Assembly (NCBI RefSeq): GCF_001194135.2 | Contig: NC_068985.1 | Location: forward strand, 78,786,162-78,850,161 | Source: Octopus bimaculoides | Lineage: Eukaryota | Direction of reading: 5' to 3' | DNA: 64,000 nucleotides | Shown: piece by piece, positions 35,150 through 61,166 of the stretch | How positions within the stretch are numbered: the first letter of the stretch is position 1 | Layout of the letters: each line of letters opens with the position of its first letter | Made by a program: the position numbers and the translations under genes | The notes under the pieces: generated by a model | What the model saw: the letters and a program-made list of their open reading frames with translations, nothing else | The model's database searches: none | Told to the model about the DNA's origin: nothing

Positions 35150-36725
35150 ATACAGTCATGATACTGCTTATCTATGTGATATTAATAAAGCCATGCCTTT
35201 GCAATATGAAAACAATATTACTAAAATCATGACACTACCTAGGCAGTAGGATATTACTGCAGACTATGATATCCGTGTCTAACCTTGGTGCATGGTTATA
35301 TATTTTAGAGGAGAGTACAGTTGATTAAACCACTCTTTGTATTGGACTGGTATTATATTTTATCAACCCAGGAAGGACGAAAGACTAAGTTGACTTGGCT
35401 GCTCCATCTTTCTGTCAATTCTGCTAATCAACCTACCATGATATCAATGTTACTAAAGCCAAGACAATCTCATAGGCTGTGATAATTTTATCCTGTGGGC
35501 TGTGTGATATTAACAAAGTTATAGATCATATTACCTTAACAACAATGTTATTTAAGCCATGATATCACATTGTCTGTGTGATATTAATATAATTGTATTA
35601 CCTTGACAACAATGTTATTAAAATTATGGTATCACATGGGCTGTTTAATATTAACAAGAGCATTATATTACTTTGACAACAATGTTATTAAAGCAATGAT
35701 ATCATGCTGGCTGTGATATTAACAGAAACATATTATTACCATGAGATAATCTTATTATTAACACCATGGTTACAAGACAGGTTATGTGATATACACAAAA
35801 CTATATTACCTTCATAACAATGTTATAAAAAAAAACTAACTTGGCAATGTTATTAAATCTATTGTATTACATGGGCTGTGTGATATTAACAAGACCATGC
35901 TATTACCTTCGCAACAAGGTCATTAAAGCTATAGTATCACATGGGCTGTGTGATATTAAGAGAACAATGATATTTCTATGGTGACATTGTCATTAAAATT
36001 ATTGTATCACATGGGCTGTGTGACATCAACAAGAAATGATATTAACCATGGGATAAACATGAAAACTTGGGTATTACATGGGCTGTGTAAAATTAACCAC
36101 GACCCATGATAATACTTAACAACAATCTTACTAAGGCCATGATACCATCTAGGTTTTATGATATTAATTAATATAACAATGACAATGATTTTCTTAAAGC
36201 TAACACATTACCAACAGTCAACAATAGTAGATAGCCCATATGATGTCACATGGACCATGTGATATTTCTGAAAGAGAATTGAACAGTGTAATCGATTCAA
36301 TTAATCAGTGTATTACTGGTATCTATTTTTAACCAAAAAGCAAAGTTGACCCTGCAAGGATTTGAATTCAGATGGGTGCAACTAAATTATCTACAACATA
36401 TAGTCGAAATGCTCTACTATTTTCGCCAACTCACTGCCCTCTAGGCTGTGCAATATTAAGATGACCACAATATCACTATGACAATGATATTATCGAGACT
36501 ATAAGGCATTATCAATACTCTGATATTACCGATATCTCGATATTATCAACAGACAACATTAACCAACAACGCCATGATACCACTTTAGGCTGTGTGATAT
36601 TTAACTAGGCAGTTAGTGACATTATATACAAAGGCTCTATAGTATTCACCAGGGCTGTGAAAATAATAACAAGGCCATGAGATTATTACCAGGGTTGTGT
36701 GCGATATTATTACCAAGTCTATAAT
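35150..36725. repeat. Continuation of the minisatellite; ~67-73-bp higher-order unit at about 35440-36180
   Basis: atgggctgtg recurs at 35871, 35941, 36011 and 36078, with variants at about 35496, 35569, 35636 and 35704. Confidence 0.85.
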
Positions 36726-37345: not shown

Positions 37346-38262
37346 TTATCGTCTTTTCGCTTTGCCATCAGTAACTCGACCCCACTTCTGCAGCCGTTGC
37401 ACCAACTGTTTGCTGACTGGAGGAATAGGATAAGAATCGCGAATGTGCAGGATACCTTTTTGGATGAAGTTGTAAGTGTTGGTTAGAGTCCTGGGGTATT
37501 GCATATTAAACACCCAATATGCAGAGAAAAGGGCTGCAAATGCAATGGTGAACTCTTCAAATTCTTGGACAATCTGTTCTTCAGCAACAAGGAAAAACTC
37601 GTCGCTTTTGAAAATTGGACCTTTTGAGAGGAGCATAGGTACAATTCGACCTTTAGGGTCAGGCTCTTCCATGCTCCCTATCTCGTAGACCATTTCTGTA
37701 AGATTTTCTCGCATAAGCATTGGTAAAAGGCAGAGTGCAGTGACCATGTCCCAATACTGTCTTAGAGCAACGTTCTCTTCTTTGACTTCACTGGCTTGTT
37801 GTAAAATGCCACTGGATCCCGGGTAGTTACGCGAGAGATCAATAATGCCACTGGCATATTTGACACAATATTCTTGGATGGTATGGTCAATATCCAAATC
37901 TGTAACACGCTGAAACTCAACGAGCAACTCCTTGTCAATGAACAAACATGGGTAGGTTTCCTTAATCATGGCAATAGTTGGTGCTTCAATAGTAATGAAG
38001 GATCGACGGACATCAAATGTATTCTCCATATATAGGCGAATGTCACTAGGAGATTTGCTTTCCATGTCATCCCTTGACGACGAGGACGGCTTCATTTTCT
38101 TTTCATTTGGGTAGTCATTGTTTTGGTCGGCAGAGTCGAGATCTTGTGAGACACTTGTTGATGGAGTTATGTTGTCAATACTACTCGACTTCCGTTTGCC
38201 TCGCTGTGACATCATCGAAGGACTTAAAATTGGCAACTCCAAACTCTCGTTTTGATATTTGG
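37346..38262 (-). CDS. Terminal coding exon (~305 codons) of a spliced gene; SAMD3-like C-terminal domain protein
   Basis: Uninterrupted ORF, visibly more GC/CpG-rich than its flanks. On the minus strand it is preceded by a polypyrimidine tract and acceptor (ttttgttttctttctttgtattttcAG|CC AAA TAT, phase 1) and ends at TAA 37348-37346. Motifs MENTFDVRRSFI...IKETYPCL and EFFLVAEEQIV...AFAALFSAYWVFNMQYPRTLTNTYNFIQKGILHI resemble the SAMD3 C-terminal region as I recall it (not searched). Basic NLS-like patches RGKRKS, KKMKP, KAKRR. The ORF-track start at 38287 is intronic. Confidence 0.85.
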
Positions 38263-38888
38263 CTGAAAATACAAAGAAAGAAAACAAAAGTAAGCAGTGG
38301 TAAAAGAAAAAAAATGCATTAGAATTATTAAAAATAGTTTTAAAGAAACTATGACAATAAACAATTAAGTAAAACTTTTAATTTTTATGATGTGCAAATT
38401 GATATTTCAATAGCAAAGAAGACAGAACTATTCTTATGAGATACAAAATGACAGAAGGTGTTATTATTTAAGTGATTTTACAAATGTTTAAACTAGTTTT
38501 GTGTCATACAGTGTTTGTGGTATAATTTTGTAGCTCAACTTAACTATTTTCCTCAGTATGGACGCATTCCCACAGCTTTCCATGCACTTACAATTCACCT
38601 CTGATATTCAAACATGCCCTAATCCTGTTCTACGCCATCACTCAATTTGCTAAAAATAGCAACCAGATCTCAAATCACACTCTTTAACAAAAAGAGAGGT
38701 CACACGAGATGATGAAATCCTAGATGCACACTCGCTGAACAGTAAAAGGTAAAAAAAATAGAATGAACAAAATTTGAATCTCTTAGTTAATAAGTTTACT
38801 TGATCAATGTTGGCTCATGAGCGGGGATAAGGACAAAAACAAACACTAAAAAAAAAAAGACATTAAAAACATATATATATATGTCATA

Positions 38889-38932
38889 CCGGCCATGACG
38901 AAGGGAAATAGCCCTGAAACTCGAGTCGTCTT
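38889..38932 (+). ncRNA. Minimal hammerhead motif with palindromic stem-III loop; C3 replaced by A
   Basis: ATGACGA 38895-38901; stem II AGGG-aaatag-CCCT; GAAAC-TCGA-GTC 38916-38927; weak stem I. Confidence 0.55.
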
Positions 38933-39218
38933 TATATATATATATTTATATTTATATATTTATATATTTGATCCTTTATATTGAACACTCAATATTTCAT
39001 CTACATTCAATACTTTCTTTCATGGTGCCATCCATTTTTATTTTATTTTATTTTATATTGTATATTGTATATTCCATATTCTATACCCCACATTAGTTCT
39101 GCAGGAATATAAATAAAACATAAAAAACAGATAGTGTTGGAACTCTTTTAAGCAAAATAATATATTCCTCTATACACAATCATACAAAAAACCCCCACCT
39201 TTTTTGTATTTATTTTTA

Positions 39219-39253
<35 letters not shown>

Positions 39254-40738
39254 CAACACCAAACACATACAATATCAAGGTTGCCATTGCAACAATAACA
39301 ATGTCGATATAAACAGTACATCAATGTTATTCATAACGACAATCACAATTGGATAGTTTGATGGTTCTCAGTCATTTGGCAATGAGGATTCAGTTGTTTG
39401 ATCAATGGAAATACCATCTTATGGAATTAATGCTTAATTGGCTGAGCATTTCACAGATGTGTAGACCCTTAATGTTATTCTCAGATAGAATCAGCAAGAT
39501 ACAGTGAGTGACAGGGCTGTATTTTTGAATTACAGGCAAAAACCTGTCTTATAAGTTTCTGTATAATTTCCGTCTACCTAATTTCACTCACAAGCTATGC
39601 ACTGAACAAAGGTTATAGAGAATGACACTTTCCCATGATGCCACACAGTTGAATCAAACCCAAGATCCCAAACACAACAACATTAACTCTTAAGAGTTTT
39701 GTACTACAATTAATTCTTAAGTTTTGAAACTGCACATAGCAGAAATTCATGAAACATTATTGTTTGGGGCCAAAAGTCAAGAACTAGTTTAGCCTCAATT
39801 TAGAAAGAACTTTCCAAGAAAAGATTTCTGTTTACACCATGTGTCANNNNNNNNNNNNNNNNNNNNNNNNNNNNNNNNNNNNGTTTTGTTCTTTTAAAGT
39901 TTATTCAGTGAATTTCTTAGATTATTTTCTTCTTTTGATTTTCAAGTGGTGAGTTTGAATTCAGTGATATTTTAGATAAATGATATATAATTTATTAATA
40001 TTCATTAATGATTTAATTAGAGAAAGAGAGCTTGAACTTAAAAGTAATCAGTGATTCAAGTTATTCTAGCTGGAATTTATATCAGGATTATCAATTTTGA
40101 GCAGGAGTGGTGTGGTTATGTAGTTGATCATTGCATTAGTGATGCACCTGACAAAACTTTGTTAGTGATGCACACCTGACAAAACTGAATGTAGAAGCAA
40201 AAGTCATTCAGTTATTTTCATCAACATAATCTTAGAAATTTGCCAGAATGAGCAATGAGACCACAAGGTATGTACATGAGCCATGTCAAATACTCTGTAA
40301 CAGGATAATACCCTTTGCCTGTCCAAAGCAGTTTCATAAGTTTCCCTTAAACATCCAAACTTGTTTTCAGACCTATAGTTAGCCCTTGCTTCACATGTTC
40401 TGAGTAATATAAAATTTTCCTTTCATAAGTCCAAAGTTACTCTGGTGGTTGAAAAAGTTGGGAATGTGCATCACATATATGATGTATGAATGCCAAGGAA
40501 ATATGACCTGTGTATCCTGGGATACACAGTACAAGCAAAGGGTTCAGGGTACATAGGTCAGTGGAATGCTCAGTCAATTAAACAGCAATTCAACAAAATG
40601 GTGGTTCTAGTGATTGAACAACTAAATTGTCATTGTCAAATAACAGAGAACCATTCACCTACCCACCCATCCAGTTGAAATTGTTGCCATAAATGGTATT
40701 GATATTGTGCTTATATTGACATTATTAATATTCTTGTT

Positions 40739-40880
40739 GGAAGAGGGAGACCCAGGAAGACATGGGATGAAGAATTGAAGGTTGATCTCAAAATGCTGAA
40801 TCTTATAGAGATGACACAGGACCAAGATATGTCACAGATTACTGTATTCAGGAGGACCTGTCAACCACAACAGAATTGAG
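40739..40880 (+). mobile_element. RTE-type LINE extreme 3' coding fragment
   Basis: Translates GRGRPRKTWDEELKVDLKMLNL..MTQDQD, resembling the RTE C-terminal GRP..TW motif. Confidence 0.65.
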
Positions 40881-43800
40881 ATCCTAAAACCAAGGTGCCA
40901 ACTCACTGCCTACTAGGCTGTGAAATTGTTGTGGGTGGTGGTGCCACATAAAAAGAGCCAGTACACACTGTAAAGTGGTTGGGCATCATTACATCATACC
41001 ACCAAGTTTTATCCAAATTCCTGCAATAATTATATTTTTATAATTTATATACTGAACTAACTGCATTCCATCAAAATCTCTGGTTTCTAATAATGGACTG
41101 GAAGATTTATAGATATAACAGTACAAGAAGTGAAAAAATTACTCATAACAATAAAAAGACAGTGCAACAAATACAATAAACAAATACAAACACAATACCC
41201 ACCATCACTGCATAAAAAAGAACAGGTGACTCTACATGGCCATTTGACCTGCTAGAAATAGCAACCAAATCTTTCTCAAATTGAATTCTATTGTTTTATA
41301 AAAGTAAAGGAAGTAGATAATATGTTGTAAAATTATCATTTTGCATTAATTGGTTTGGTTTGAAATAAAGTTCCATGCCCCATGGTCTTTGTAGGGTGTT
41401 TGAGCTTCGTTTGTTATCATTAATGTTCTTCTTGAATGATTAAGAGTCAAGAATTATGGGGAGAAAAGGACTGGATGTTGTGGTGTGTAAAGGGGCTTTG
41501 GGTAGCTGTAGATAAAATGCGTCTAAAAAAAGGATGGGGTAGTCATGACTGGAATGCCTTTCATCGTAAGTTAGCTCAATCCATCAAGGCTGAAATGGAG
41601 TTAAACAATAACTAGAACAAAAAGTACACAAGACACATTTTAAGAAATAATGCAAAATAACTTGCAGAAACAGGGTTGGGTATGTGGTTAAGCAGTTCAC
41701 TGCACAAATGTAGTCCCAGGTTCAGTCCCATTTTGTGGCATTTTGAGCAAAAGTCTTTTATGATAGTCTTAGGTTGACCAATGCCTTGCAAATGAACTTG
41801 GTAGATGGAATATGTGTGGAAGTTCTTTGCATGTGAGTGTGTGTATGCATGTTTCTAAGCCTGTCTTGGTGTAAACACTACAAAGAAAAATCCACGTTTT
41901 GTAACTAGACAGTAGGACGAATAACAAATGCTAAAATAAGTACCAGGCGTAATGGACTACAAACCTTCAGGATAGTGTTCCTGCAAGGCCACACTCCACT
42001 GAATGAAACACATAAAAGCATATAAGAGAAAAAGAGTAACTAGTTCTTCCTCCTCCTCCTCCTCCTCAACCACCACCACCACCAGCCAGAAGGATATAAT
42101 TATTATTGGTTTAGTATATCTATCTACCTTAATAATGGTCCTATCACATTTCTTCTTTTTGCCCTTAATTTTACAATGGCTATTTTCTGGTTAAGGATAA
42201 GAAGGACACTCAACCTTGAATAATAAGATAAGAGATAAAGATCCTTCCCAAGACGTACAGACTCATAGGCCAGTTTCTCAGTTTCGATGGTACATATATC
42301 TTCTCCTTGGATAGGACACCAGTCAGTTTCAGGATTACTCATTTTTGCCAGCTGAATGAACTGAAGCAACATGAAGTGTTTGCTCAAGAACACGTTTCAC
42401 TTGGTCCAGGAATCAAAACCACAATCTTACACTCATGATTTTAACACCCTAACCACTAAGTCATGCGCCCCCACTCAACCTTTAATGAGAACCTAATTTC
42501 CATGTGAGCAACTGAACGAAGGATAAAAAACACTTCAATTTCACATTTTGCTAAATATATGTGACAATTGTCCATCTATCTATTTACTAATACTAAGATT
42601 AGTAAATGTTTTTTTTTTCCCGTAACTATTGTAAGTGGCCAAAGGAATAACAAGATAATTAAATTTCTTTCTACTTTGGGATAAAAGTTGAACTTATCAG
42701 TCATAAGTACAAGTTCAAAGATAATTTCCCCAGTTTGTTCTAAAAACTTTTTCACCAAAATGCTTCGAAATTACCACTAAGAAGACNNNNNNNNNNNNNN
42801 NNNNNNNNNNNNNNNNNNNNNNNNNNNNNNNNNNNNNNNNNNNNNNNNNNNNNNNNNNNNNNNNNNNNNNNNNNNNNNNNATATATATATATATATATAC
42901 ATACACACACACAGATATAAATACATACAAACATATATATTCTGCCTGTTTACATATTTAACTATAAAGACACTTTTATTTTCTTATTGTTTACATTCTT
43001 ATCTATGAAATACACTTTATATTTTATCTTGTTTACACATGTCTATGAATATATTATAAATTCTGTTTGTTTACAAAAATATTTGCAGAAATAAAAACGA
43101 AATTTAAATAAAATTTACAACTCATAAAATTGAGTCTGATAAGTTAGAAGGTTAATTTAAAAGAGATCTTTTTTTACAGTTTTATAAGCAAACATTCCAG
43201 GTGTTGAGTAGTATTTGTATTTAATGAAACTAAGCCAAATGATGTTCTCAGTTCAAATTCTGCTGAGATCAACTTAGCTTTCTTCCTTATAGGGTTGATA
43301 AAATTATCAGTTGAGCTCTAGGGTTGACTAACTCTGTCCTCTCAAAGCTGCTAGCTTTGAGCCAAAATTTGAAGCCATTAATAAGAGAAATGGATAAAAA
43401 TTATTTTGAGTGTGGCCATGCAGGAACACCAACCAGAAGGTTTGTAGTCCATTGTGCCTGGTACTTATTTTAGCAATCACTATTCGTCCCACTACCAAAT
43501 TTAAAAGACAGATTTTCTTTTCACCAAGACAGGCATAAAAACAGATACATAAATTCACACACAAAGGACTTCCATGCAGATTCCATCTACCATGTTCATT
43601 TGCAAGGCATTGGTCAATCTAAGACTATCATAAAAGACTTTTGCTCAAAATGTCACAAAGTGGGACTGAACCTGAGACTACATGTTTGTGAAGTGAACTG
43701 CTTAACCACACACCCAAGCCTGTTCCTGCAAGTTATTTTGCATTATTTCTTAAGATATGTGTATTGTGTACTTTTGGTCTTTTTCCTCTTAGTTATTGTT

Positions 43801-44112
43801 TAATTCTTGTTCAGCTTGGGTATGTCAGCTTGAGTACCATTGTTTTACATACCGAAATGTCCCATATCCTAAAACGGTGATTCCAAAACCTTTTTATATA
43901 TTTGTGCTCCAGCATAGCCACAGCCTTTATGCTGAAATGTATAAAAGAATATATCAGGTGTGGCTGTGTGGTAAGGAGCTTGCTTCCCAACTACATGGTT
44001 CCAGGTTCAGTCCCTCTGTGTGGCACCTTGGGCAAGTGTCTTCTACTATAGACTTGGGCCGTCCAAAGCCTTATAAGTGAATTTGGTAGACGGACACTGA
44101 AAGAAGCATGTC

Positions 44113-44148
<36 letters not shown>

Positions 44149-45129
44149 CTTTGTGTTTATGTCTCCATAACTTGACAGTTTGGCAAAAGATCGATAAAAT
44201 AAGTACCAGGCTTAAAATTAAAAAAAGTACTGGCGTTGATTCATTTGACTAAAAATTCTTCAAAAGTGCCCCAGCATGGCTGCAGACTGAAACAAGTAAA
44301 ACATAAGAGACATGTGTGTGTGTTTGTATATTTCTGTCTCCTTACTGTGACTTCATGTGATAGTCATAAACAAATTTTACTGACATGCAGGTAGTGTCCT
44401 TCATTTCCAATCTTCTGCGAAACATGTCTGATCATAAGGAATATTATCTGACTTGGAAACAGGTGAGGGTTGGTGACAGGAAGTGCATCTGGCTATTGAA
44501 AATCTGCCTCACCAAATTCTGTCCAACTCATGCAAGCATGGAAAAGTGAACATTAAAATGCCAATGTCACCAACAATGATGACCTACCAGAAAATCTATA
44601 TTTCTAGTTTCAATGAAGAAAACTTTTCTTCTCAGAGGCCCTGAAAAGTAAAGGGCTTTGCATGTTGCCCTTTCACTAAATGGTGAAAAAAGTTTCTAAA
44701 ATGTATTTATATATTTTAACCTATAGATGTAATTCAAGCTAGCAATGCAACATATAACCAACTCACAAACTAGTACAACTTGGTAGTATGCATCATGCTT
44801 TTACTAATTGTTTTAGGTATCTATGTAACCACCTATAGATACAGGTGCCCTCCTGACCAAGCAGAATATCTATTATGTGATACAAGAGAGAGAGAGAGAG
44901 AGAAAGAAAGAGAGAGATGCACTGGTATTAGGCTGAGCAGACTGGAACAACATGAAATGAAATGTCTTGTTCAACAATACAACACATCACCCAGCCAAGG
45001 AATTGAACCTACTACTTTATGATTGGGATCTGAACACTCTACATTACTAGGCCATGCATCTTCACTAATTTAAACTACAGAAACGTTTTACATACTCATT
45101 TCTTTACTTAAATAACTGTAAAAGAATTA

Positions 45130-46420
45130 GAAAGCATATAGCATTCCCCTGACTTCTACCCCAAGTCTGGTCAACTTTGCCTTTCGTTTTCCTAAGGTTG
45201 ATGAAATATATACCAGTCAAGCAAAGGGACCAATGCAAACTTACACCCTCCCACCAAAATTTCAGGCCTTTTGTCTATAGTAAAAAGAATTATCATTAAT
45301 ATTATTATTATTATTTATTATAATCACCATCATTATTTTTAAGGCAGCAAGCAGGCAGTATCATTAGCATACCAGGCAAAATGCTTAGCAGTATTTCATC
45401 CATCGCTACGTTCTCAGTTCAAATTCCACCGAGGTCGACTTTGCCTTTCATCCTTTCGGGGTCAATAAATTAAGTTTCTTACCAGTTGCTTACTGGAGTC
45501 AATCTAATCGACTGACCCCCTCCCCAAAAATTTTGGGTCTTGTGCCTAGAGTAGAAAAGATTATTTCAGAGTCAATAAAATAAGTACCAGTTGAGTACTG
45601 GGGTTGGTGTAATCGACTATGCCCCTCCTCCAAATTTTGGGCCTTGTGCTTGTAATAGAAAGGATTATTATGATGATGATGAACATGATCATTGAGGTGG
45701 TAAACTGGCAGAATTGTTAGTACGCCAGGCAAAATGCTTAGCGGCACTTTGCCTGTCCTTACATTCTGAATTCAAATTCTGCCAAGGTTGACTTTGCTTT
45801 TCATCCTTTCAGGGTTGATGAAATAAGCAGCAGTTACACACTGGGGTCGATGTAATCAACTAGCTCCCTCCCCACAAAACTTGTGCCTATAGTAGAAAGG
45901 ATTATTATTATCCTGATCATGATTAAAGCAGTGAGCTCACACAATTGTCAGCATGCCAGGCAAAATGCTTAAGGAATTTCATCTATCTTTACATTCTGAG
46001 TTCAAATTCTACCAAGGCTGACTGCCTATGATCCTTTTGGAGTTGATAAAATAAGTACCAGTTGAACACTAGGGTCAATGCATGATCATTAGCCAGACAA
46101 AATGCTTAGCAGTATATTGTCTTTACATTTTGAGTTCAAATTCAACCAAGCTTGACGTTGCCTTTCATTCTTTTGTGTGATCAATAAAGTAGGCACCAGC
46201 TAAACAATGGGGTTGATGTAATCAACTAACTTCTCACCCCTAAATTTCAGGCCTTGTGCCTATAGTATAAAGAATTACTACTATTATTAAGTTGACTTTG
46301 CCTTTCATCCATTTGGGGGTCAATAAAGTATGTACCAGTTAAGTACTGGGGTTAATATAATCTACTAGCCTCCCCACTCTCCTAAAATACTTCAAACTTT
46401 GTGTCTATTGTAGAAAAGGC
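45130..46420 (+). mobile_element. Cluster of ~7 head-to-tail Meta-type SINEs, plus strand
   Basis: Includes well-preserved copies at about 45340-45560 and 45695-45910 (ttctgaattcaaattctgccaaggttgactttgcttttcatcctttcagggttgatgaaataag). Confidence 0.8.
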
Positions 46421-46499
46421 TGCTGTTGTTGTTGGTATTTTACTATTATTGGTGGTAGTGGCAGTAGCAGTAGTAGTAGTAGTATCTCTTTGTGTCTGT

Positions 46500-47030
46500 A
46501 TAGACCATGCACGTGTTGATTGACTTACTAGATTATGAAAACGATGTTTCTTTCCAACCAGTTCCGAAGACTTCAGACAGAAAGTGCTTTTCTTTCAATA
46601 TTAACAGTTCCAAGCAATGTAGATTTTGGTCTGAAGTTGATGCTTATTTTTATTTGAAGTTGTTTGAAGTAGAGTGGAAACTATTGGTAAATTAAGCCTA
46701 GAGCCTATTATTGATATCATGCTTGTTATCTTCACATTCTTGAGAACACTAACCTAAGTTGGAAGTACTTAACAAATATCTTTAAATTCCTTTTGGGCAG
46801 TATTTATGGTCTCTAGGTATAGTAATATTCATTAAAATCCATTAGTGCTTCCTTATCAAAATCCACACTATCAGATATTTTTATTTAACTTTCATGGCCC
46901 CAAAATTATTTCATATATATACTGCAATTAGTATGTTTCTATGAGCCAATCACTGGTCTTCTGGGGTGTATCATAAGGGAGTGTTTGTAAATTGGTGTCA
47001 AACAAACACCACAAAGGACTTTATTTGAAG
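46500..47030 (-). mobile_element. Possible highly decayed RTE-like reverse-transcriptase fragment
   Basis: Faint minus-strand traces of GC.LSP-, D.DD- and YLGS..S-like segments; no intact frame. Confidence 0.3.
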
Positions 47031-48239
47031 AACACTTGTATTTTTTTTCTAGTTGTCTACTTCCTTCATTGGTATATAAAATGAGAAAATATATGCACAT
47101 GTATATACATACACATCCTTTTTGGTACGGAAATGGTGAGTTCCAGAAAATATTTTTGTAATGTGGAGTTCTGTTACGAGAAACCTGTTTTCACATTGAC
47201 TCTCATATTAAGCGGAAGTTACTGAACACAGAACTCAAAGAGAAATGTATTTCCTGCCATAGAACTCCACAATTTTCATAAATGCAATGTATCCATGCGT
47301 AAGGAATGGGTCAGTGTGTGTGTATGACTGTGTGCACATGCATAGTTCATTGCATTTGTCCATAAGAAGGTTTACAAAAATGAAATAAAGAACTCAGTAC
47401 TTCAGGAAAAGCAGTAGTTTTACAAAGTTAAATCTGTTTTGATTCTTAGAGAATTCGAACACAAATTTAGGATAACATTTCTCTTAAATTTAGGATAACA
47501 TTTCTTCTAAAATGTGAGTAGCTATGTAGCTTCTCTGGAGCATGAAACCTTTCTGCTCTGGCTCCTTCTGTCATATTTAAAAACCCTGATATCATAGCAT
47601 AAAGCTACCTCTCAGAGGGTTCATAGTTTTGCAAGCTGCATGGAAACCTCACTTGTGCTGACGGAATGTGGTGGTGGTGGTGGGGGGAAGAACAGTCAGT
47701 ATGTACTGCCAAGCAGTCGGCATTAAGAAGGGTATCCAGCCATAGAAATCATGCCAAAGTAGACAGTGGCACACAATGCTGTCCTTGGACCCATCAGTTT
47801 CTCTTGTCAAACTGACCAACTCATACCAGTATGGAACATGAATGTTAAATGATGATGATGATGACAGCGTATGTTTGGGTATGGGTGCACACATGCATTT
47901 GAAAATAGGTTTCCACAATTTACATCTGTGTGAGATCCACTAACAAGATCTTGGCCAACCAAAGGTTATGGAAGAAGACACTTGCCCAAAGTGCTATGTA
48001 GTGGGATTAAACCTGTAACTATATGGTTGTGGAGAGAATGTTTCACCCAAGACAAAGATTGGGATGCATTTTGATAAAGAAAGCAATTGTATTCCTTTCA
48101 GGTATTAGGAAGGGCATCCAACCGTAGAAACCATGCCAAATCAGACTGGAGTTTGGTACCGCCTTCCAGCTTGCCAGCATGGACAATGAACGTTAAATGA
48201 TGATGATGAAAGTGGGTTACACTCACTGTCTTCTCTCTA

Positions 48240-49060
48240 TAAATTCAATATTGGTTAGACTTTCCAACTTAGAAGATTGTATTGAGAATTTTGTCTTTAG
48301 AATCATTTGTAGAGAAGGTGAGGAAGTGTACTAAAACACTGTTTCTTTGATTTGTGGAGTGATTTTTCTTAGGACTGTTGAAGTACACTAGTTTGCTGTA
48401 TTCTATTGGAAGACAATTACATTGCTTCTTTTCTTAGAAGCACATTGCTTCTATTCTTAGAAGCAGAATATATCTAGTCCATGTTTCTGGAAGCAAAGCT
48501 GGTCTGATAAAAGTGTCTAGTTTGTTTGTAGATGATATCTGTGTGTGTTTAAAGTTGATGAGAAGTGAAGAATGACATCATATGGATAGGAGTACATTGA
48601 TGTTTCTTAACTCTGAAGGAGCTGCAATAGCAGAAGAAGACATAAAAGGAGGACACAATACCTATGTATGCTAGTGGTTATTGATGAAGGAAGATTTGCC
48701 AATCAGTCAGATGGATTTTGCTTAAGTTGTGGTCTTGAATGTTTGTGTTTATGTAGTTACAGTTTCATCAAAGATAAACAAAGCTGTACTCTATCCACGA
48801 AAGGTGCTGTTTTATCTTGTATAAGCATAGTAGATATTCAAAGTCAAAGCGGTTTCCTCTTTGAAGAGAAAACCTGTTCTTTGAGATGTAGTTTTGTTTA
48901 TGGGGTCATCATGAGAAATGATTAATCATCAGAGATTGACAAGTTTAACATTTGTAAATTTTGTAAAGGTTTTAGTTTTGCGTCGTTGAAGAACTGGTAG
49001 TCTGAGGTAGCATGTTTTCTTGTTCATGAGGAGGTATATGAAGCAGTAACTGTTAAATGT
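48240..49060 (-). mobile_element. Decayed CR1-like LINE 3' portion
   Basis: Minus-strand traces of IYKAQIRP.LEY-, Y..CSSEL- and FFPRT-like motifs; heavily mutated. Confidence 0.45.
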
Positions 49061-52000
49061 CTTATTCAAGGACACTGCACCACTGCTAACAACAAAAATA
49101 TGAAGAGTGACTCAGCTAATAACTTAATAACACTAGTTGAGTCATATCATTTGCATGTGAGATTTTTTTTTTTAACTATAATTCAGTTTTAGGTTGTTAT
49201 AGAAGTTTACTGGAGTAAAAAAAAGATAAAAAAAGGAAGAGAATAGGATGGTAGAAAAGAAGATGGAAAAGAGTAAAGATGGAAAGAAAAGCAGAAAGAA
49301 ATGAAATGAAAGCAAAAAAGGAAATGAGATACAATATGGAGTTTAGAAAAGTTAGAAAAGAAACAGAAATTGAAGGAAGACTAGACAGATATAAGCTTGG
49401 TTGCAGATTACGTTACTTTTCAGGATTGCATGCAATTATATTTTTTAATTTGAGCAACTTAAAATATTCTGGAGTGTCAATCTATCATTATTCTATTCAA
49501 TTTGAAAATTTACATTAATATTTTTGGCCAATCAGTAACATTCATACACATTAAATGGAATTTGTTTTGTCATATTCTTAGATACTTTGATTGTTATTGT
49601 GTTATGAAAGCTCAATCTTGGAAAAATAAATCATCGAGAAACTATAATTACAAAAGAATTAAATGACTTGATACAAAAATACACCAATGTAGTTCATAAA
49701 AGTAATACATAAACTATGAAGAGCAAGTTAGGTGAAATTACACAAACCTACTTTCTGCTGGAATTTATGGCATTATTGATCATTTATCACTGTTTTCATC
49801 ATACAATAACTGTTACAGCACTACCAATTACATTACATCTTCTGAAAAAATTGCTCAGGCAATCATTACACAAGTCTATTGATATTTTAGAATATTTTTT
49901 TCATAAATTCAATAAAAAATTTCAATATTGTTTGATATTAATTTTAAACTCTAAAATATTTTGATAATTATAAATAATTAATATATTGTAATGGTATTCA
50001 CATATGTTACGGAATGATTGTATCCAGGATTAAACAGAGGCATTCATGCACTTTTTGGCAAATGCTTGACTGTAAAGTTAGGTTTTACCAGTAATGGTGT
50101 ATGGCAGGTTTTATTAATAAATTTATAATAGCACTAACATACTGTCATAAAGATAGTATGGAGCGGGGCTACTGTTTTCTATGTAAACCTTTTTTAACCT
50201 GTGAATAGATGTGTATCTGGCTGCTATTTCTAACCACAAAGAAGTTCCTTGGTATAATAAAGTGAACTTGGGCATAGTTAGCAGAGAAAAAGTCTAAACA
50301 AAATACTTTTTGATAAATCTTTGTTAATCTAAGACTATACCTATTTATACAATAAGTAGTCCAATTTTTTGGTTTAGATCCTGGATAATGGATCCACAAT
50401 TTTCAAACTAGGATAGATAAAACAAATAGGATAGGAATAAAATATTGTATAAAGTGTGCCATGATGAAATATAAAGTCATAGAACCAATTTAACAAAGCA
50501 TGTTTCTTCAGCTAAACATAAAAAAGAAATGTAATAATTCACAACAAATATTCAAAGCAGGTTTTCCAGTAACACAATACCAAAATTAGAACAACAATTA
50601 GCAACATTTGCAGATTGTCGTGTAAGAAGAAATTAGCATCAATTGCAATATGAAACCCTAAAGAACAAAATACAGTGCACTTCTTTATTGGGGAAGATTT
50701 TCTATGGCAGGATGCCCTTCCTGTTGCCAACCTTCACTTGCAGCTCAATGGCTAGGAATATTTACGCAGAATACTTGAAAAGAACGACACTGGTTGTATG
50801 ACAGTGACTCAACTATCATGCAATGTCATGGCAAGGAGTCATCAACATACATGCATATACATGCCGCCATCACCACCACCAACAACCACCCACTTTACCA
50901 CGTTTGTATGGTTCTGAGAATTTTATGAAGTAGATTTTCTACAACTAGATGCTCTTCCTGTCACCAACCCTTACCAGTTTCCAAGCAAGGTAATATTTCC
51001 CCATTGGCCAGACAGGATTTTGCAAAATATTGGAAATGACTGACATTGCTTCTATGACAGTGATCCACATTTACAACTATCACACATCAAGAAAAGGAGA
51101 CACAAACATGCATGCACACACATACACATCATCATTATTGTTTTAACATCCATTTTCCATGCTTGCATGGATCAGGTGGAATTTGTTCAGCTAGATTTTC
51201 TGACTGGATGCCCTTCCTACTGCCAAGGCTTACTTGTTTCCTGGCAAGGTAATATAGCCAAGCATGTTTTTCAAAGAAGATTAGAAATGAACATCACCTG
51301 TATGATGATGGTGTGTTTACAACCATGACATGATGTCAAGACAAAGGTACACATACACAAACATACACACAATGGCAAAGTTAGGTAAATTTACCTTCTC
51401 GAATCATACCAACTCACAAGGGCCAGTTTGCTGGTTTTATGACATATATATTCCCCACCTGGATGGGATGTCGGTCTATTGCCAAATTACTCATTTTTTC
51501 CAGCTGAGTGGACTGGAGCAATGTGAAATGAAATGTTTTGCTCAAGAACACATCACATGGTTCAGGAATTGAAACCACAATCTTACTATCATGAGTCCAG
51601 CACCCTAACCACTATGCCACAAGCCTCCACTATACACACAATGGGCTTCTTTCAGTTTTTGTCTTCCAAACGCTCAAGGCATTTTTTTTGCTCAGCCAGG
51701 GGCTATAAAACAAGAAAATTGCCCCAGGTGTTGTCCAATGGGATTGAAACCTAAAACCATGTGGTTGGGAAGCAATCTTCTTAATCACACAGCCATGCTT
51801 GTGCATTTTTATCATATATAAGCATGAACATAATATATTTAGATACATTTGTTTGCGTGTTGCATACCTTTCTTGATATCTAAGGACAACAGATTAATGT
51901 CTCACATAGGACTATAAATACAATAGATATAGCAAGTGTTAAATTTGATTTTATAGTCGAATGTCTTCATTTTCATCTCATCACACACGGAAATTGATAC

Positions 52001-52149
52001 TTCAAAGGTATTTAGTCTCTTGATTTGCTCTGTTAATTCCATTACTAAAATATCTTACCATAACTGCAATGATGTCACATATTCTCTTTTCAATATTTTT
52101 CATATATAAACATATGCTGTTTAAATAAATATATATATATGCACAAACA

Positions 52150-53414
52150 CAGAGGGTGCGATGGGTAAATTGTTGCTGTTTTATAATTTCAATTTTGTGC
52201 ATGCGCATTGTTTGTTTTTGATTTTGTTGACTACAGTATAGTAAGGTCAATCGGGCACCATCTGTGAGAAAAACAGCACCATGATGCAATTCACTCTGCT
52301 AGAAATTTGGAAACGGCATGTTGTACTGCTTGGCATTCATGCTGGAAGCTCCAATACAAACGTTTCAGAATGTTCGGGTGTCAATTTGAGGACAGTGCAG
52401 AGAATTCGGAAAGATTTGGATGAGTCTAATGGAAAACTCATTCTAATTGTTCTGATTAAGAAACGAACTCCTGAATTTGTTGGTGAGATCCAGACCATGA
52501 TTGACAACAATTCCTCCATGTCAATCAGGTCCATTCCCAGGGACATGGAAATGTCTGAGTTTATTATCAGGCAAGTAGTGCATGAAGACATTTGGTATTC
52601 CTCATACAACATGAGAAAGGGCCAATTTTTATCCCAAGCCATCAAGGACAAGAGGAAAGACCATGCTACAAAGCTTTTGAACAAACTCAAGCATCCCCTC
52701 CAACTGAACATGCTTTGGTTTTTCTCAGATGAGAAAAATTTCTGCCAGGATCAGATGCTGAACACACAGAACAACTGTTAGCTTGCCGTACCCCCAAAAC
52801 ATGTACCGAGAGTGGTAAAAAATCAAACATTCAGCCAACATCATGGTGTTTGGAGAGATCACGAGTGATGATGATGTCATGCCTCCATTCATCTTTCCAC
52901 ACAGCCCAAGACTCAATATGGAAGCCTACATCAAATGCCTAGAGGAGGTAGTGCTGCTCTGGGTGCTGGAAGACTCTTTCTCTGGCAACAAGACTCTGCA
53001 TTATGTAACACAACCAAGAGAACCCAGTCATGGCTGTCAGTCAATTTCTGTGACCACACCACCCCACTCCTAACATCTGGCCACCTAACATGCCAAACTG
53101 CAACCCCCTTGATTATTATGTGTGGGGTGCAGTTGAGCAAGAGATCAACAAAATTCCTTGTAACACCAAAGATGAACTGAAGGTAAGGATTATGGCAGCA
53201 TTCACCAACTTAAACATGGAGACAGTCCAGAAAAGTTGCAGGAGATTCCGAAGTAGTCTAGAGACCATGGTTGAAGCTAATGGCAATTTTATTGAATAAA
53301 TTTACTCTTTAGTACTTCAAGATATTTTTATGTAATTTTGGTAACTATATCTGTTACAATGAGGTGTTAGCGCTATTTTCATTCTTGCATAATTCAGACG
53401 ACAATTTATTCACC
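52150..53414 (+). mobile_element. Tc1/mariner superfamily DD37D (maT-type) transposon, degenerate; transposase remnant 52281-53299
   Basis: Motifs WFFSDEK, QQDS, WPPN.P.CNPLDY. D2-D3 spacing is 37 after removing a 4-bp insertion near 53066. Left TIR gagggtgcgatgggtaaattgttg is matched by gacgacaatttattcacc at 53397-53414, which runs into a gap. Confidence 0.85.
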
Positions 53415-53424
53415 NNNNNNNNNN

Positions 53425-53475
<51 letters not shown>

Positions 53476-54024
53476 GGATAACAGACAAAAATCTGAGAAA
53501 TTAGTTAAATCAGCAGTACAGAATAAAATAGATCTCATTGTATATACAGCTGAGCCGTACATATACGATTAGTTAAGGATAGTTAATAAAAGATGCAAGC
53601 TCATGCATATTAAAACTACTGAGGCCATAAAATTAAAATAAATGAACAGATAGTCATAGTTACACAACATGCTTCTTTCATTTTCTGTCTATCAAATCCA
53701 TTCACAAGGTTTTGGTCAAGCCTGAGTATATAGTATAAGACATTTGCCCAAGGTACTACATAGTGGGAATGATCATTTGGAATCAGGTGGTTTGGAAGCA
53801 AGATTTTCAACCACACAGCTACTCCTGTGGCTGTGTGTGATGTATGTATCTTTAGCCAAATGCAGGTCAGCATATTTAAGTAATGAGCCAAAAATGATTT
53901 TTAACTAAAATTACCTTGCTGCTTAATGTTAAAAATAGTTAAGGGAGATATGTAAAATACAAATTTTAATGAGTTTGGGAGGAGCAGGGAGAGTGTGCCT
54001 GATCACCGGTAGCCATGGTGACAA

Positions 54025-54065
54025 CTCTGAACATGTTTCAGTCTTACTGAACCTCTTCAGCGAAG
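54025..54065 (-). ncRNA. Minimal hammerhead motif with intact catalytic core
   Basis: Minus strand reads cttcg CTGAAGA ggtt-cagtaa-gact GAAA CATG TT cagag. Confidence 0.5.
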
Positions 54066-55949
54066 CATAGTTCACTCAAGGGCTGCCAAAACTGACAGAA
54101 GTATAACTGTTTTACATGAAGTATATTCACTGATTAGGAAAATTAAAATTTAAACGATATATGGATAATTTCCTAAGGACAATTTCTGTAGCAATAATAT
54201 ACAGCTGAGTGCATGCTGGCCATTTGAGGTGGTAATTTTTCGATTAATCAAAATTACAAACCTAATGAGAAAAATGTTATTAGTCTTAATGAAAATTTGG
54301 CTTGATTGATTTGACTTGAATGTTTGATTAGATTAAATTGATTGATAGATTAGATTATACAGGTTAGATAGATTGATAGAGATTGTGTATGTGCATGTAT
54401 GTGTCAGAGAGAGAGATAGTGTGTGGGGGTGGGGAAAGAAGAGAAAAAGAGATGAAGGATGATAAGCAAGAAAAAAAAAAGATAATGAATAGACAGAATG
54501 AGGCAAGCAGAATAGAAGAGAGAGAGAGAGAAAATAAAGACATTGAATAGAGAAAAAGGGCTTTGAAAGAAAGTATTGAGAAGTAGCAAAGATAAAAGGG
54601 GGAAAATATAGAAATGAAAGAGAGAGACAGAGAGAGAGAGAGAAGCAAAGAAAAGTAAAACATTTGTGGGCATCAGCATTAAGAGATTACTGAAATGATC
54701 GCCACAGTAGGGAGGGAGAGGGAAAGAAAGAAGATAAAGTAGTGAGAGAGTAAGGGAGTAGATGGAGAGTGTGAGTTAGCAGGAAAGGAGGGACAGGCAG
54801 AGGAGTTGAAATTACCTTACATCTATCAAGTTTATAAATACTGCAGTTAAACCTTTATAATCCTTAGCTATCATAATGATAGTAGTGGTGGTGGTGGTGG
54901 TGGCAGTTATGGCAATGAAGCGGATGAAGATTTTGAAAGCAAACCTTGGAAAGTTAGATCTTAATCTGGGAGTGCAGTGCAGTGCTGTGTAGTGCAGAAA
55001 ACTTGCTCATTTGGTTTAGCAAGAATTATACAGAAAGTTCTTGACACAAAGTAAGAACAATATGAATGGCAGAAAAGGATTTTAGAGGAGAAAGGACAAA
55101 AAAAAATAAATAAATAAAAAAACTCCTCGTCCTCAGAACTCAAGTTGTGACCTGACAGAAAACATTCCCCACTTGACAATATATTAGATGCACTTTTTTA
55201 CAAAAATAATGTCTAAAAAATCCACCCTGCTTGATGTGAGATGATGATGGTGGTGGTGCTGGTGATCATCACCATCGCTGTTTGACTGGAGCTGATCAGG
55301 CAGATGACTGCACCATACTTCTGTGTCTGTTTTGACATGACTTTTTACGGCTGGTTGAACTTCTTAACATCAACCACCCTGCAGAATGCGCCGAGTGCTT
55401 TTTATGTGGCACCAGCACAGGCAAGGTCAGTTTTGGCATTATATGCTTTAATGTACTAATAACTTTTTACTTGAATATGGGCTAGTCCAACTTACTCTGT
55501 AAGGAGCAAAGGGCCAGTTTCCTGATTTCTATGACATATACATTCCTCCTTGGACAGGATGCCAGTCTGTTGCAGGATTACTCATTTTTATTAGCTGAGT
55601 GGACTGGAGCAACATGAAATAAGGTATTTTGCTCAAGGACACACACATTGCCTGGTCCAAGAATCAAAACCACAATCTTATGACAATGAGTCCAACACCC
55701 TAACCACTAAGCCATGTGCCCCCACTACTTTTTTTCATGGATATACACTTCTGTAATTAGGATGAATATAATATGCCCATGTGTCTTTTTGCCATTAAGT
55801 ATGTAATTAACATCATCATCATTTAATGTCTGTTTTCCATGCTGGCATAGGTTGAACAGTTCTACATGAAATAGAGTGTCTTGCTCAAGAACACAACACA
55901 CAGCCCGGTCCAGGAATTGAATTTATTCATCAATAAATGTACCAAATAA

Positions 55950-56145
55950 TGGTTTCAAATTTTCAAGGAAGGCATAATTTAATTACATCGACCCCAGTGC
56001 TCCACTGGTACTTATTTTATCAATTCTGAAAGGATGAAAGGCAGAGTTAACCTCAGCTAGATTTTAACTCAGAACGTAAAGACAAATGAAATGCTGTTAA
56101 GCATTATGCCCAGCGTGCTAACGATTCTGCCAGTTTGCCATCTTT
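55950..56145 (-). mobile_element. Meta-type SINE copy; further copies at about 26320-26478, 29310-29495, 35300-35430, 36270-36440, 60770-60900 (minus) and 43185-43400, 57848-57990 (plus)
   Basis: Shared module recognised by direct sequence comparison within the window. Confidence 0.7.
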
Positions 56146-57032
56146 AGTGTACAAAATGATCCCTTGCTTCAGTTATCTGAGATGTCAACTTGTAAAGGAA
56201 GGCCACAGTTGATGGAATTAACAACTCCTATGATATATAACTGGTACTTATCTACCAGTCGTATGCTACTTTGTCAAGGTGATGAAATGAAAACTAGGCC
56301 TCATAACAAAGCCAGTCAGTGAGTTTCTTGTTCATTCAAAATTGTAGAAATAGCAATAAAATCACCTTCAAATTGCACCCTACCATTTTGAAATTAGGAC
56401 TCATTAAATAATGTTGTCCTAGAGGATACTATTTAATAAAAAGTGAGATGTCCATGGCTGGAACATCTTTGATTATAAGTCTGCTGTTTCATAGATCAAA
56501 ATTAACTTGGGGCTAAATAGCAACATAAAGTAGATACTACCAAACATCTTATGATAGTTATTGTAGATATAAACATGTATTAAAAGAAATGCCTTTATCT
56601 AATTGAGGTACTTTCTAAATTAATACCAGGTTTATTCTAAAGTTGATTTACAAATAAATTAAAGACAAATACCTTTTAGATTTTAGCTGTTTTAGTAATT
56701 TGACTGTGACCATTTGGGACATAACCTTGAAGGGTTTATAGTTGAAGAGATTGACAATTGTATTTTTGTTTTTAAAGCCTAGAACTTACACTGTCACTCT
56801 CTTTTGTTGAACTGCTTAGTTACAGGGACATAAATAAACACATACACCCAAACACATGCATAGATAGACAGATAGATACACACATACACATGTGTACATA
56901 CACACATGATGGGTTTCTTTCTGTTTCCATCTACCAAATCCACTCACAAGGCTTTGGTTAACTTGGGATTACAGTAGAAGGTATTTGTATATGGTACCAC
57001 ACAGTGGGACTGAATCTGAGGCCATTGTTTGA

Positions 57033-57348
57033 ATGAGAAATAATGCCCCACCCACCATATTTGCCAGACATTGCCCCCATCTGATTATCATTTATTGCGC
57101 AGTCTTCAAAATCATTTGGACAGAAAAAATATGAATTCTGTAGACGAGGTCAGAACAGTACTGGATGAGTAGTTTTTTGTCACAGACAAGTGAATGTTGG
57201 AAGAAGGGCCTTGCAAGTCTACCAGATAGATGGAAGAGCATTGTAGAAAATGAAGGAGAGTATATTTTAGATTAAAAATGAACTTTATCTTAATTTTGAA
57301 AAATAAAAGAAGTATAAAAACACACATTATTTATGGGATGACCCAATA
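57033..57348 (+). mobile_element. 3' fragment of a second mariner family
   Basis: Translates to PHPPYLPDIAPSDYHLLRSLQNHL...RWKSIVENEGEYILD*, followed by a mariner-like right end ...ttatgggatgacccaata. Confidence 0.8.
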
Positions 57349-61129: not shown

Positions 61130-61165
<36 letters not shown>

Positions 61166-61166
61166 A

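What the first reader, a model, noticed from the sequence alone, without database searches (positions are those of the whole stretch)
37346..38290. Intact spliced exon encoding a SAMD3-like, possibly transposon-derived domain in a field of dead elements
Seen: a 917-bp exon with no stops or frameshifts and a textbook acceptor, whereas every transposon ORF in the window is broken; no TIRs or transposase lie nearby. Recalled: this domain type occurs in vertebrate SAMD3 and in many uncharacterised animal proteins, some associated with DNA-transposon (EnSpm/CACTA-like) accessory ORFs; its function is unknown. Inference: a host gene under purifying selection, possibly a domesticated transposon domain spliced onto unknown upstream exons, with a low-complexity basic linker suggesting nuclear localisation.
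Basis: partly seen in the sequence, partly recalled or inferred. Interest (0 to 1): 0.7.

Follow-up and report, generated by a model that had tools for sequence, protein, structure and literature searches.

The report
Conserved mollusc gene with transposon-related domain
The exon is almost the whole coding sequence of a single-copy gene kept under strong selection in octopus, snails and bivalves, and its folded domain, which has no known structure or function, is also carried as a second gene inside a cut-and-paste DNA transposon in fish.

Summary
A 917-nt terminal coding exon lies on the minus strand at 37346-38262, with a phase-1 acceptor (ttttcag|CC). Its frame is 343 stop-free codons, against at most 207 in 200 shuffles.

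Supported:
- It is a host gene. dN/dS is 0.02-0.03. Most named mollusc species have one orthologue, at 46-66% identity.
- Spliced transcripts with the same junction exist in a cuttlefish-like relative.
- Residues ~63-305 match the C-terminal domain of proteins that databases name SAMD3 or SAMD3-like (hhalign 98.6%).
- The transposon link now has direct evidence. In crucian carp this domain belongs to the second gene of a ~10-kb element with CACTG...CAGTG inverted ends, 2-bp target duplications and a tnp2-like transposase.

Not supported:
- Upstream exons add no domain. They give only Met-Ser plus one base, from a 7-nt coding mini-exon about 13 kb beyond the window. Bivalve orthologues have an intronless coding sequence.
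- There is no SAM domain.
- The N-terminal region is disordered and slightly acidic, with two conserved basic clusters.

The domain models confidently (pLDDT 94.7) but matches nothing in Pfam or PDB. Best reading: an anciently co-opted transposon accessory domain acting as a non-catalytic binding module. The direction of transfer and the function remain inferred.

The parts
37346..37348 (-). Stop codon TAA
   Evidence: Read directly from the sequence. The translation ends ...GKAKRR*.
37349..38262 (-). Coding part of the terminal exon: 2 nt of a split Ser codon plus 304 codons, that is 305 of the 307 codons of the protein
   Evidence: ORF. It is 99% identical to the 307-aa Octopus vulgaris/sinensis protein P0001. 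dN/dS is 0.02-0.03. Exon identity to O. sinensis is 98.5%, against 90.5% in the adjacent intron.
38263..38290 (-). 3' splice site: polypyrimidine tract and AG (ttttcag|CC)
   Evidence: Sequence. The site is conserved in O. sinensis and Argonauta. Similarity to spliced cuttlefish-like transcripts begins within 4 nt of it.
38263..64000 (-). Distal 25.7 kb of the large intron that separates the 7-nt coding mini-exon from this exon; the mini-exon lies outside the window
   Evidence: The window is collinear with O. sinensis L001 and O. vulgaris L002 at 89-96% identity. Window position 64000 corresponds to about L001 23069, while the ATG mini-exon is at L001 10001-10007.
38210..38215 (-). Two in-frame ATG codons (M17, M18). 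These correspond to the start codon of the bivalve and gastropod orthologues (MSQ.KRK) and are the probable ancestral start
   Evidence: Scallop, oyster and consensus proteins start MSQxxKRK. The bivalve coding sequences are single exons. Acceptor-like sites lie 22-50 nt upstream of this Met in oyster, scallop, abalone and octopus.
38078..38262 (-). N-terminal intrinsically disordered region (residues 1-62) with conserved basic clusters (KRK at residues 23-25, window 38189-38197; EKKxK at about residues 53-57)
   Evidence: AlphaFold2 pLDDT is below 50 for residues 1-62. K23, K55 and K56 are invariant or nearly invariant across 30 mollusc sequences. The region has 47% S/T/P/N/Q and pI 5.2.
37349..38080 (-). 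Folded alpha/beta domain of 244 residues: about nine helices, a four-stranded sheet, then three C-terminal helices. This is the 'SAMD3 C-terminal-like' domain, ending in a basic tail KAKRR
   Evidence: AlphaFold2 gives pLDDT 94.7 and pTM 0.90. hhalign against a fish protein named SAMD3 (P0339) gives probability 98.6%, and against the carp transposon gene product (P0296) 98.5%. There is no Pfam, PDB or BFVD match.
35644..35649 (-). Only AATAAA/ATTAAA-type signal (ATTAAA) within 2.3 kb downstream of the stop; a candidate polyadenylation signal, unverified
   Evidence: Pattern scan. The 2 kb downstream of the stop is 96-97% identical to O. sinensis, more than the intron at 90.5%. This is compatible with a long 3' UTR.

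Best explanation
Window 37346-38262 (minus strand) is the single large coding exon of a mollusc-wide host gene that is single-copy in most named species and is expressed.

Gene structure. A non-coding 5' exon region ends in a 7-nt coding mini-exon (ATGTCAT). This lies about 46.7 kb upstream in O. sinensis and about 13 kb beyond the right end of this window. It is spliced in phase 1 onto this exon.

Protein. The 307-aa product has a disordered N-terminal region of about 62 residues with conserved basic clusters. It then has a compact, acidic alpha/beta domain of about 240 residues.

Origin of the domain. The domain is homologous to the C-terminal domain of the 'SAMD3 / SAMD3-like' superfamily. 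In teleosts and a thrips, members of that superfamily are the second gene of CACTA/EnSpm-type DNA transposons with a tnp2-like transposase. There the domain follows a PB1- or CIDE-N-type oligomerisation module.

Most likely history (inferred). The accessory-protein domain of such an element was placed behind a host 5' exon and splice acceptor, and was fixed before cephalopods, gastropods and bivalves diverged. It lost the oligomerisation module and any link to a transposase.

Most likely mode of action (inferred, weakest step). It is a non-catalytic module that binds a protein partner, probably in the nucleus. It retains the partner-binding surface that the transposon protein uses. It is not an enzyme or a non-specific DNA binder.
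For: Shown:
- ORF, splice site and phase.
- The same exon junction in spliced transcript contigs of a decapodiform cephalopod, found in 92 sample blocks.
- dN/dS 0.019-0.028, with dS up to 1.08.
- The exon is more conserved than the intron.
- Orthologues at 46-66% identity in about 25 named mollusc species, one per species except two stylommatophoran snails with two each.
- In the exhaustive profile search the mollusc orthologous group scores at least 338 bits; the next full-length proteins score 104 bits or less.
- The locus is collinear in three Octopus genomes.
- Bivalve coding sequences are intronless.
- An acceptor or acceptor-like site lies 22-50 nt upstream of the ancestral Met in four classes or orders.
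- Domain homology: 1050 representative proteins at E<=1e-3, named SAMD3-like in echinoderms, teleosts and bivalves. hhalign gives 98.6% and 98.5%.

Transposon link:
- Two Carassius loci on different chromosomes share a 10.2-11.2 kb block at 99.6% identity.
- The block is bounded by CACTGTAAAATGTAA inverted ends and 2-bp duplications (CA, TA).
- It carries an 886-aa C2H2 plus tnp2-like ORF, followed by the SAMD3-like gene.
- The same gene order is seen in a mormyrid fish and is fused in two thrips proteins.
- Apostichopus has dispersed copies at >=90% identity on at least 8 chromosomes.

Non-enzymatic reading:
- Superfamily-wide conserved positions are mostly hydrophobic or structural, plus one Arg.
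- The domain has pI 4.7.
- Relatives repeatedly fuse the domain to polymerising modules: PB1 weakly, CIDE-N strongly.
Against: - The direction of transfer (transposon to host, or host to transposon) is not resolved. At 20-25% identity no phylogeny was attempted.
- The transposase assignment rests on sub-threshold Pfam Transposase_21 hits (25 and 14 bits against a cut-off of 28.6) plus the CACTG ends.
- Homology to genuine tetrapod SAMD3 was not tested directly. The fish proteins named 'SAMD3' have no SAM domain by Pfam, so the name may simply have spread through annotation pipelines.
- Expression and splicing were shown in another cephalopod, not in the window's species.
- Nuclear localisation rests only on short conserved basic clusters.
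- No partner or activity is known.
- The Foldseek searches found no fold that could suggest a function.
Confidence: 0.6

Rival explanations
1. Reverse direction. The domain is an old metazoan host domain, represented by this mollusc gene and by vertebrate SAMD3. CACTA-type transposons captured it as a passenger gene, so the mollusc gene was never part of a transposon.
For: - The mollusc gene is very old and single-copy in most species.
- Transposons of this superfamily are known to capture host gene fragments (general knowledge of plant CACTA elements, from memory).
- Only some relatives were shown to sit in elements. The Labeo locus L010 shows no adjacent transposase.
Against: - The transposase-linked arrangement recurs in two phyla with the same gene order, in thrips and in teleosts.
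- Most of the superfamily is multi-copy.
- An intronless coding sequence placed just behind a splice acceptor is a typical domestication layout.
Confidence: 0.25
2. First reader's version. The exon supplies a C-terminal domain to a larger protein whose N-terminal domains, for example a SAM domain, are encoded by unknown upstream exons.
For: - The phase-1 acceptor shows the exon is not translated on its own.
- Related proteins of about 500 aa carry N-terminal modules.
Against: - Annotated proteins in O. vulgaris/sinensis and Argonauta are 307 and 306 aa and start MSS.
- The mini-exon ATGTCAT|GTAAGT is conserved.
- Transcript contigs of a relative read ...ataaaaATGTCATCCAAA....
- Bivalve orthologues are complete at 290-296 aa in one exon.
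Confidence: 0.03
3. The exon belongs to a currently or recently mobile transposon copy that happens to be intact.
For: The domain family is transposon-borne elsewhere.
Against: - No inverted ends and no transposase in 64 kb.
- The orthologous position is shared by three Octopus genomes.
- The same gene structure is found in Argonauta, with dS of about 1 and dN/dS 0.03.
- One protein cluster for Octopus.
Confidence: 0.01

Closest known systems
Vertebrate SAMD3 (sterile alpha motif domain-containing protein 3) and the many proteins annotated 'SAMD3-like'
   Same: A C-terminal domain of about 230 residues with the motifs M..TF..RR, YP.LF, EF.R.T and YyVFN..YP....T..FiQ. The profile search gives E 1e-24 to 1e-11 against SAMD3-like proteins of echinoderms, teleosts, bivalves and ticks. 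hhalign gives 98.6% against a protein named SAMD3 in Danio aesculapii.
   Different: No SAM, PB1 or CIDE-N module, and no middle region. The protein is about 300 aa rather than about 500. It belongs to a separate mollusc-only orthologous group (score gap 338 to 104 bits). It is single-copy in most species and far more conserved than the rest of the superfamily.
Second gene (accessory ORF) of animal CACTA/EnSpm-type (CMC superfamily, tnp2-like transposase) DNA transposons, as in the Carassius element L009:4349-14600
   Same: Homologous C-terminal domain (hhalign 98.5%, E 3e-15).
   Different: The transposon gene has an N-terminal PB1-like module and about 270 extra residues. It has introns and sits 170 nt behind a transposase ORF, inside CACTG...CAGTG ends with 2-bp target duplications. 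The octopus locus has none of these features.
TnpA of plant En/Spm (CACTA) elements, the classical accessory protein of this superfamily
   Same: The resemblance is functional only. Both are a second, non-transposase protein encoded by a CACTA-type element (established knowledge of En/Spm, from memory).
   Different: No sequence similarity was tested or claimed. TnpA is a DNA-binding protein, whereas the domain here is acidic (pI 4.7).

Membership tests
SAMD3 (vertebrate gene family) | N-terminal SAM domain | tested here: not met
   No Pfam hit in the 305 aa. Residues 1-62 are predicted disordered. The full protein has only 2 more residues.
SAMD3 (vertebrate gene family) | C-terminal domain of about 230 aa shared by SAMD3 and SAMD3-like proteins | tested here: met
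   hmmsearch profile hits to proteins named SAMD3-like. hhalign gives 98.6% against P0339, 'SAMD3 [Danio aesculapii]'. Caveat: the names come from annotation pipelines, and human SAMD3 itself was not compared.
SAMD3 (vertebrate gene family) | Orthology to vertebrate SAMD3 | tested here: inconclusive
   The mollusc group is separated from all other hits by a gap from 338 to 104 bits, and the nearest outsiders are echinoderm proteins. No tree or synteny analysis with vertebrates was made.
Domesticated (co-opted) transposon-derived host gene | Homology to a protein encoded inside a bona fide transposon | tested here: met
   The Carassius element has inverted ends, target duplications and a transposase, and two copies at 99.6% identity. 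Its second gene product P0296 matches the mollusc profile.
Domesticated (co-opted) transposon-derived host gene | No transposon ends or transposase at the locus | tested here: met
Domesticated (co-opted) transposon-derived host gene | Single-copy orthologues at a conserved position in several species | tested here: met
   The locus is collinear in three Octopus genomes. Argonauta has the same structure. There is one hit per named mollusc species, apart from two snails with two each. Synteny between mollusc classes was not assessable. Whole genomes were not searched for paralogues.
Domesticated (co-opted) transposon-derived host gene | Purifying selection on the coding sequence | tested here: met
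   dN/dS 0.019-0.031 in four pairwise comparisons.
Domesticated (co-opted) transposon-derived host gene | Expression as a host transcript | tested here: inconclusive
   Spliced full-length transcript contigs exist in 92 sample blocks of a decapodiform relative, with the same junction. No data are available for the window's own species.
Domesticated (co-opted) transposon-derived host gene | Direction of transfer is transposon to host | not testable with these tools
   This needs a rooted phylogeny of host and transposon-borne copies with curated element consensus sequences. Identities are only 20-25%.
CACTA/EnSpm-type DNA transposon copy | CACT[AG] terminal inverted repeats with short target duplications | tested here: not met
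   Only 3 chance-level 12/14 matches among about 1000 candidate end pairs within 16 kb on either side. Other inverted repeats are microsatellites.
CACTA/EnSpm-type DNA transposon copy | Adjacent tnp2-like transposase | tested here: not met
   tblastn with the thrips and fish transposases found nothing in the window at E<=1e-3.

The most novel reading that the evidence does not exclude
An accessory-protein domain of CACTA-type transposons was domesticated at the base of Mollusca more than 500 million years ago. It has a fold not represented in Pfam or the PDB. It now acts as an essential nuclear regulator, for instance by binding the same partner that the transposon protein uses (possibly the tnp2-like transposase itself), and so restraining related elements. 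By extension, vertebrate SAMD3 would be an independent domestication of the same transposon gene.
Probability: 0.3. Interest if true: 0.6.

Novelty: new member of a known kind. Interest (0 to 1): 0.45.

Why it matters
- The gene is an uncharacterised protein kept at 46-66% identity across the three largest mollusc classes. That makes it a good candidate for a conserved but unknown cellular role in molluscs.
- The domain has no Pfam entry, no solved structure and no Foldseek match. It is nonetheless present in over a thousand representative animal proteins.
- This work ties the domain, by direct evidence, to the second gene of a TIR-bounded CACTG transposon.
- That link gives a concrete starting hypothesis for the unknown function of the SAMD3-like family. 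According to database names, this family includes vertebrate SAMD3.
- Within the library I could search, no paper describes this link.

Tried and rejected
- Pfam on the exon product gave only a chance VirC1 hit. PDB sequence searches with the single sequence and with the profile found nothing.
- Foldseek against PDB with two models, and against BFVD, gave best E-values of 2.8, 3.5 and 0.33 with TM <= 0.17. No fold assignment is possible.
- I searched the window for the ATG mini-exon by pattern and by BLAST. It is absent and lies beyond the window's right end.
- A word-indexed profile search with a superfamily alignment mostly re-found the mollusc proteins, so it added little.
- I tried to validate a human SAMD3 sequence recalled from memory by exact look-up.
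- Pfam found no SAM domain in 68 relatives or in 7 fish proteins named 'SAMD3'.
- Synteny between mollusc classes could not be judged. The scallop neighbour is a D123 gene and the oyster neighbour a Sec7/IQSEC-like gene, and no gene lies within 10 kb in octopods.
- The Labeo locus L010 shows no adjacent transposase. The mormyrid copy has an internally deleted transposase.
- Five literature searches for SAMD3 with transposon terms, and one for the gene identifiers, found nothing relevant.
- I rejected the chance-ORF, pseudogene, active-transposon and larger multi-exon-protein readings. The reasons are given under the rival explanations.

Full report
**1. What is in the sequence**

The feature lies on the minus strand. 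The stop codon TAA is at 37346-37348 and coding bases run to 38262. Upstream is a long polypyrimidine tract and AG (ttttgttttctttctttgtattttcag|CC) at 38263-38290.

Its stop-free frame of 343 codons is the longest in the window. The next real frame has 178 codons. In 200 base shuffles the longest frame averaged 129 and never exceeded 207.

The window has several assembly gaps and many microsatellites. It contains no other long frame.

**2. Gene structure**

The product is 99% identical to a 307-aa protein of Octopus vulgaris/sinensis and 94% identical to a 306-aa protein of Argonauta. Those proteins start MSS-K.

In the O. sinensis, O. vulgaris and Argonauta genomes the first coding piece is a 7-nt mini-exon, ATGTCAT|GTAAGT. 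It sits about 46.7 kb (Octopus) or about 26.9 kb (Argonauta) upstream of the main exon.

The window is collinear with both Octopus loci at 89-96% identity, so it comes from a close but different Octopus species. Its right end corresponds to about L001 position 23069. The mini-exon therefore lies about 13 kb beyond the window.

Upstream exons contribute only Met-Ser plus one base, not a domain.

In scallop and oyster the whole coding sequence is a single exon starting at MSQ.KRK. That Met aligns with the internal M17/M18 of octopus. In abalone an annotated intron ends 36 nt upstream of that Met. Scallop and oyster have acceptor-like sites 46 and 22 nt upstream of it, and in octopus the acceptor is 48 nt upstream of the first of the two ATGs. 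I infer an ancestral layout of non-coding 5' exon(s) spliced just ahead of one intronless coding exon. Some lineages then extended the frame from an upstream ATG.

**3. Expression**

Contigs of 2.0-2.7 kb assembled from public sequencing runs carry the uninterrupted 306-aa frame with the junction ...aaaATGTCAT|CCAAAT.... They represent an 88%-identical protein matching the cuttlefish gene model and occur in 92 sample blocks.

Because the genomic intron is tens of kb long, these contigs must be spliced transcripts. They align to the window only across the coding exon, starting within 4 nt of the acceptor. This shows expression and the junction in a coleoid relative, not in the window's own species.

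**4. Selection and distribution**

| Comparison | dN/dS | dS | Differences |
|---|---|---|---|
| Window vs O. sinensis/vulgaris | 0.019 | 0.071 | 14 nt, 1 amino acid |
| Window vs Argonauta | 0.028 | 1.08 | 131 nt, 16 amino acids |

The exon is 98.5% identical to O. sinensis, the adjacent intron 90.5%, and the 2 kb downstream 96-97%.

Orthologues at 46-66% identity occur in cephalopods, bivalves and gastropods. There is one per named species, except two stylommatophoran snails with two each. Heterobranch snails add a low-complexity N-terminal extension of 200-300 aa.

In an exhaustive profile search of 1.84 billion representatives, the mollusc group scores at least 338 bits. After some short fragments, the next full-length protein scores 104 bits. 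The gene is therefore a distinct, mollusc-specific orthologous group inside a much larger superfamily with 1050 representatives at E<=1e-3.

**5. The domain**

AlphaFold2 predicts residues 1-62 to be disordered. The rest is a compact domain of about nine helices, a four-stranded sheet and three final helices. The domain-only model has pLDDT 94.7 and pTM 0.90.

Nothing known matches it:
- Pfam found no family.
- PDB sequence and profile searches found nothing.
- Foldseek against PDB and BFVD gave a best E of 0.33 to 3.5 with TM <= 0.17.

The domain is acidic (pI 4.7). It is flanked by conserved basic clusters, KRK and EKKxK in the N-terminal region and KAKRR at the C-terminus. Positions conserved across the whole superfamily are mainly hydrophobic, plus one Arg. 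This argues against an enzyme.

**6. Relatives and the transposon link**

Distant relatives at 20-28% identity are named 'SAMD3-like' or 'SAMD3' by NCBI/UniProt. They occur in echinoderms, teleosts and bivalves. Unnamed ones occur in ticks and a sea spider. The mollusc profile matches the C-terminal 210 residues of 'SAMD3 [Danio aesculapii]' with hhalign probability 98.6%.

None of the 68 relatives, nor 7 fish 'SAMD3' proteins, has a Pfam SAM domain. Some have weak PB1 hits, and two thrips proteins have a strong CIDE-N hit. I could not compare with human SAMD3 itself. A sequence I recalled from memory failed an exact look-up and was discarded.

It now has direct evidence:

- **Crucian carp.** Two loci on different chromosomes share a block of 10.2-11.2 kb at 99.6% identity with sharp edges. 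The block starts CACTGTAAAATGTAA and ends with the inverted copy of that sequence. It is flanked by 2-bp duplications, CA in one copy and TA in the other. Inside are an 886-aa ORF and, 170 nt later, the SAMD3-like gene.
- **That 886-aa ORF.** It has C2H2 fingers. It aligns to a thrips protein over residues 117-868 (E 1e-60). It gives a sub-threshold Pfam Transposase_21 hit at the same profile region as the thrips protein does.
- **The SAMD3-like gene in the element.** Its product matches the mollusc profile with probability 98.5%.
- **Mormyrid fish and thrips.** The mormyrid has the same order, with an internally deleted transposase ORF ending 6 nt after the start of the SAMD3-like ORF. In thrips the two parts are fused in two gene models.
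- **Signs of mobility elsewhere.** A sea cucumber has 23 members at >=90% identity on at least eight chromosomes. One 90% cluster spans several teleost orders.

The octopus locus has none of these transposon features.

**7. Interpretation**

- Near-certain: this is a conserved host gene, and the exon holds essentially the entire coding sequence.
- Well supported: its domain belongs to the SAMD3-like superfamily, which is carried by CACTA-type elements in other animals.
- Inferred: the mollusc gene is an ancient domestication of that accessory domain. I put this at about 0.6, and capture in the opposite direction at about 0.25.
- Weakest inference: it works as a non-catalytic, probably nuclear, partner-binding module.

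As annotated sequence, the gene exists in databases only as a 'hypothetical' or 'uncharacterized' protein. I found no literature on it, or on the SAMD3-transposon link, in the searchable library.

Noticed in passing
L009:4349-14600 and L008:4350-15556 (Carassius carassius OY720492.1 and OY720470.1): A young DNA transposon with two copies at 99.6% identity, 10.2 and 11.2 kb long. It has 15-nt CACTGTAAAATGTAA inverted ends and 2-bp target duplications (CA, TA). It carries an 886-aa C2H2 plus tnp2-like transposase ORF, followed by a PB1-like plus 'SAMD3-like' gene. This implies that many teleost 'SAMD3-like' gene models are transposon genes.
   Followed up: partly
Protein cluster of P0138: One 90%-identity cluster holds SAMD3-like proteins from Cypriniformes, Clupeiformes, Esociformes and Perciformes. 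That is far too similar for vertical descent and suggests horizontal transfer of the element between fish lineages.
   Followed up: no
L007:6430-7983 (Paramormyrops kingsleyae): An internally deleted transposase ORF (C2H2 fingers joined directly to the C-terminal half) ends 6 nt after the start of the SAMD3-like ORF. This looks like a non-autonomous derivative that keeps the second gene. An unrelated integrase/RNase H-like retroelement remnant lies at 12484-14399 (-).
   Followed up: partly
window 52245-52778 (+): A 178-codon stop-free frame ending ...WFFSDEKNF. This is a mariner/Tc1-like motif from memory. Pfam gives only a weak HTH_23 hit, so it looks like a truncated transposase remnant.
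   Followed up: partly
window 2155-3043 (+): Two frames (…AAQDQCLPTRNYQANI… and …IPVVIGALGMI…) resemble the C-terminal parts of retroelement proteins common in marine invertebrates. That resemblance is from memory. Pfam found nothing.
   Followed up: partly
window 35346-37345 (-): The 2 kb downstream of the stop is 96-97% identical to O. sinensis, against 90.5% for the intron. This may reflect a long conserved 3' UTR. It contains a (GA)n/(GAGA) tract at about 37060-37180, and the only ATTAAA signal is at 35644-35649.
   Followed up: partly
Proteins P0007 (Acanthosepion pharaonis) and P0056 (Aplysia californica): Public annotations of orthologues are flawed. The cuttlefish model translates the 5' UTR and replaces the C-terminus with low-complexity sequence. 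The Aplysia orthologue is named 'proteoglycan 4', apparently because of its low-complexity N-terminal extension.
   Followed up: partly
window 3592-4340, 11653-11784, 14289-14410, 15099-15485, 20857-21438, 39847-39882, 42787-42880, 53415-53424: Runs of N (assembly gaps), mostly next to microsatellites. One of them (39847-39882) lies in the intron 1.6 kb upstream of the exon.
   Followed up: no
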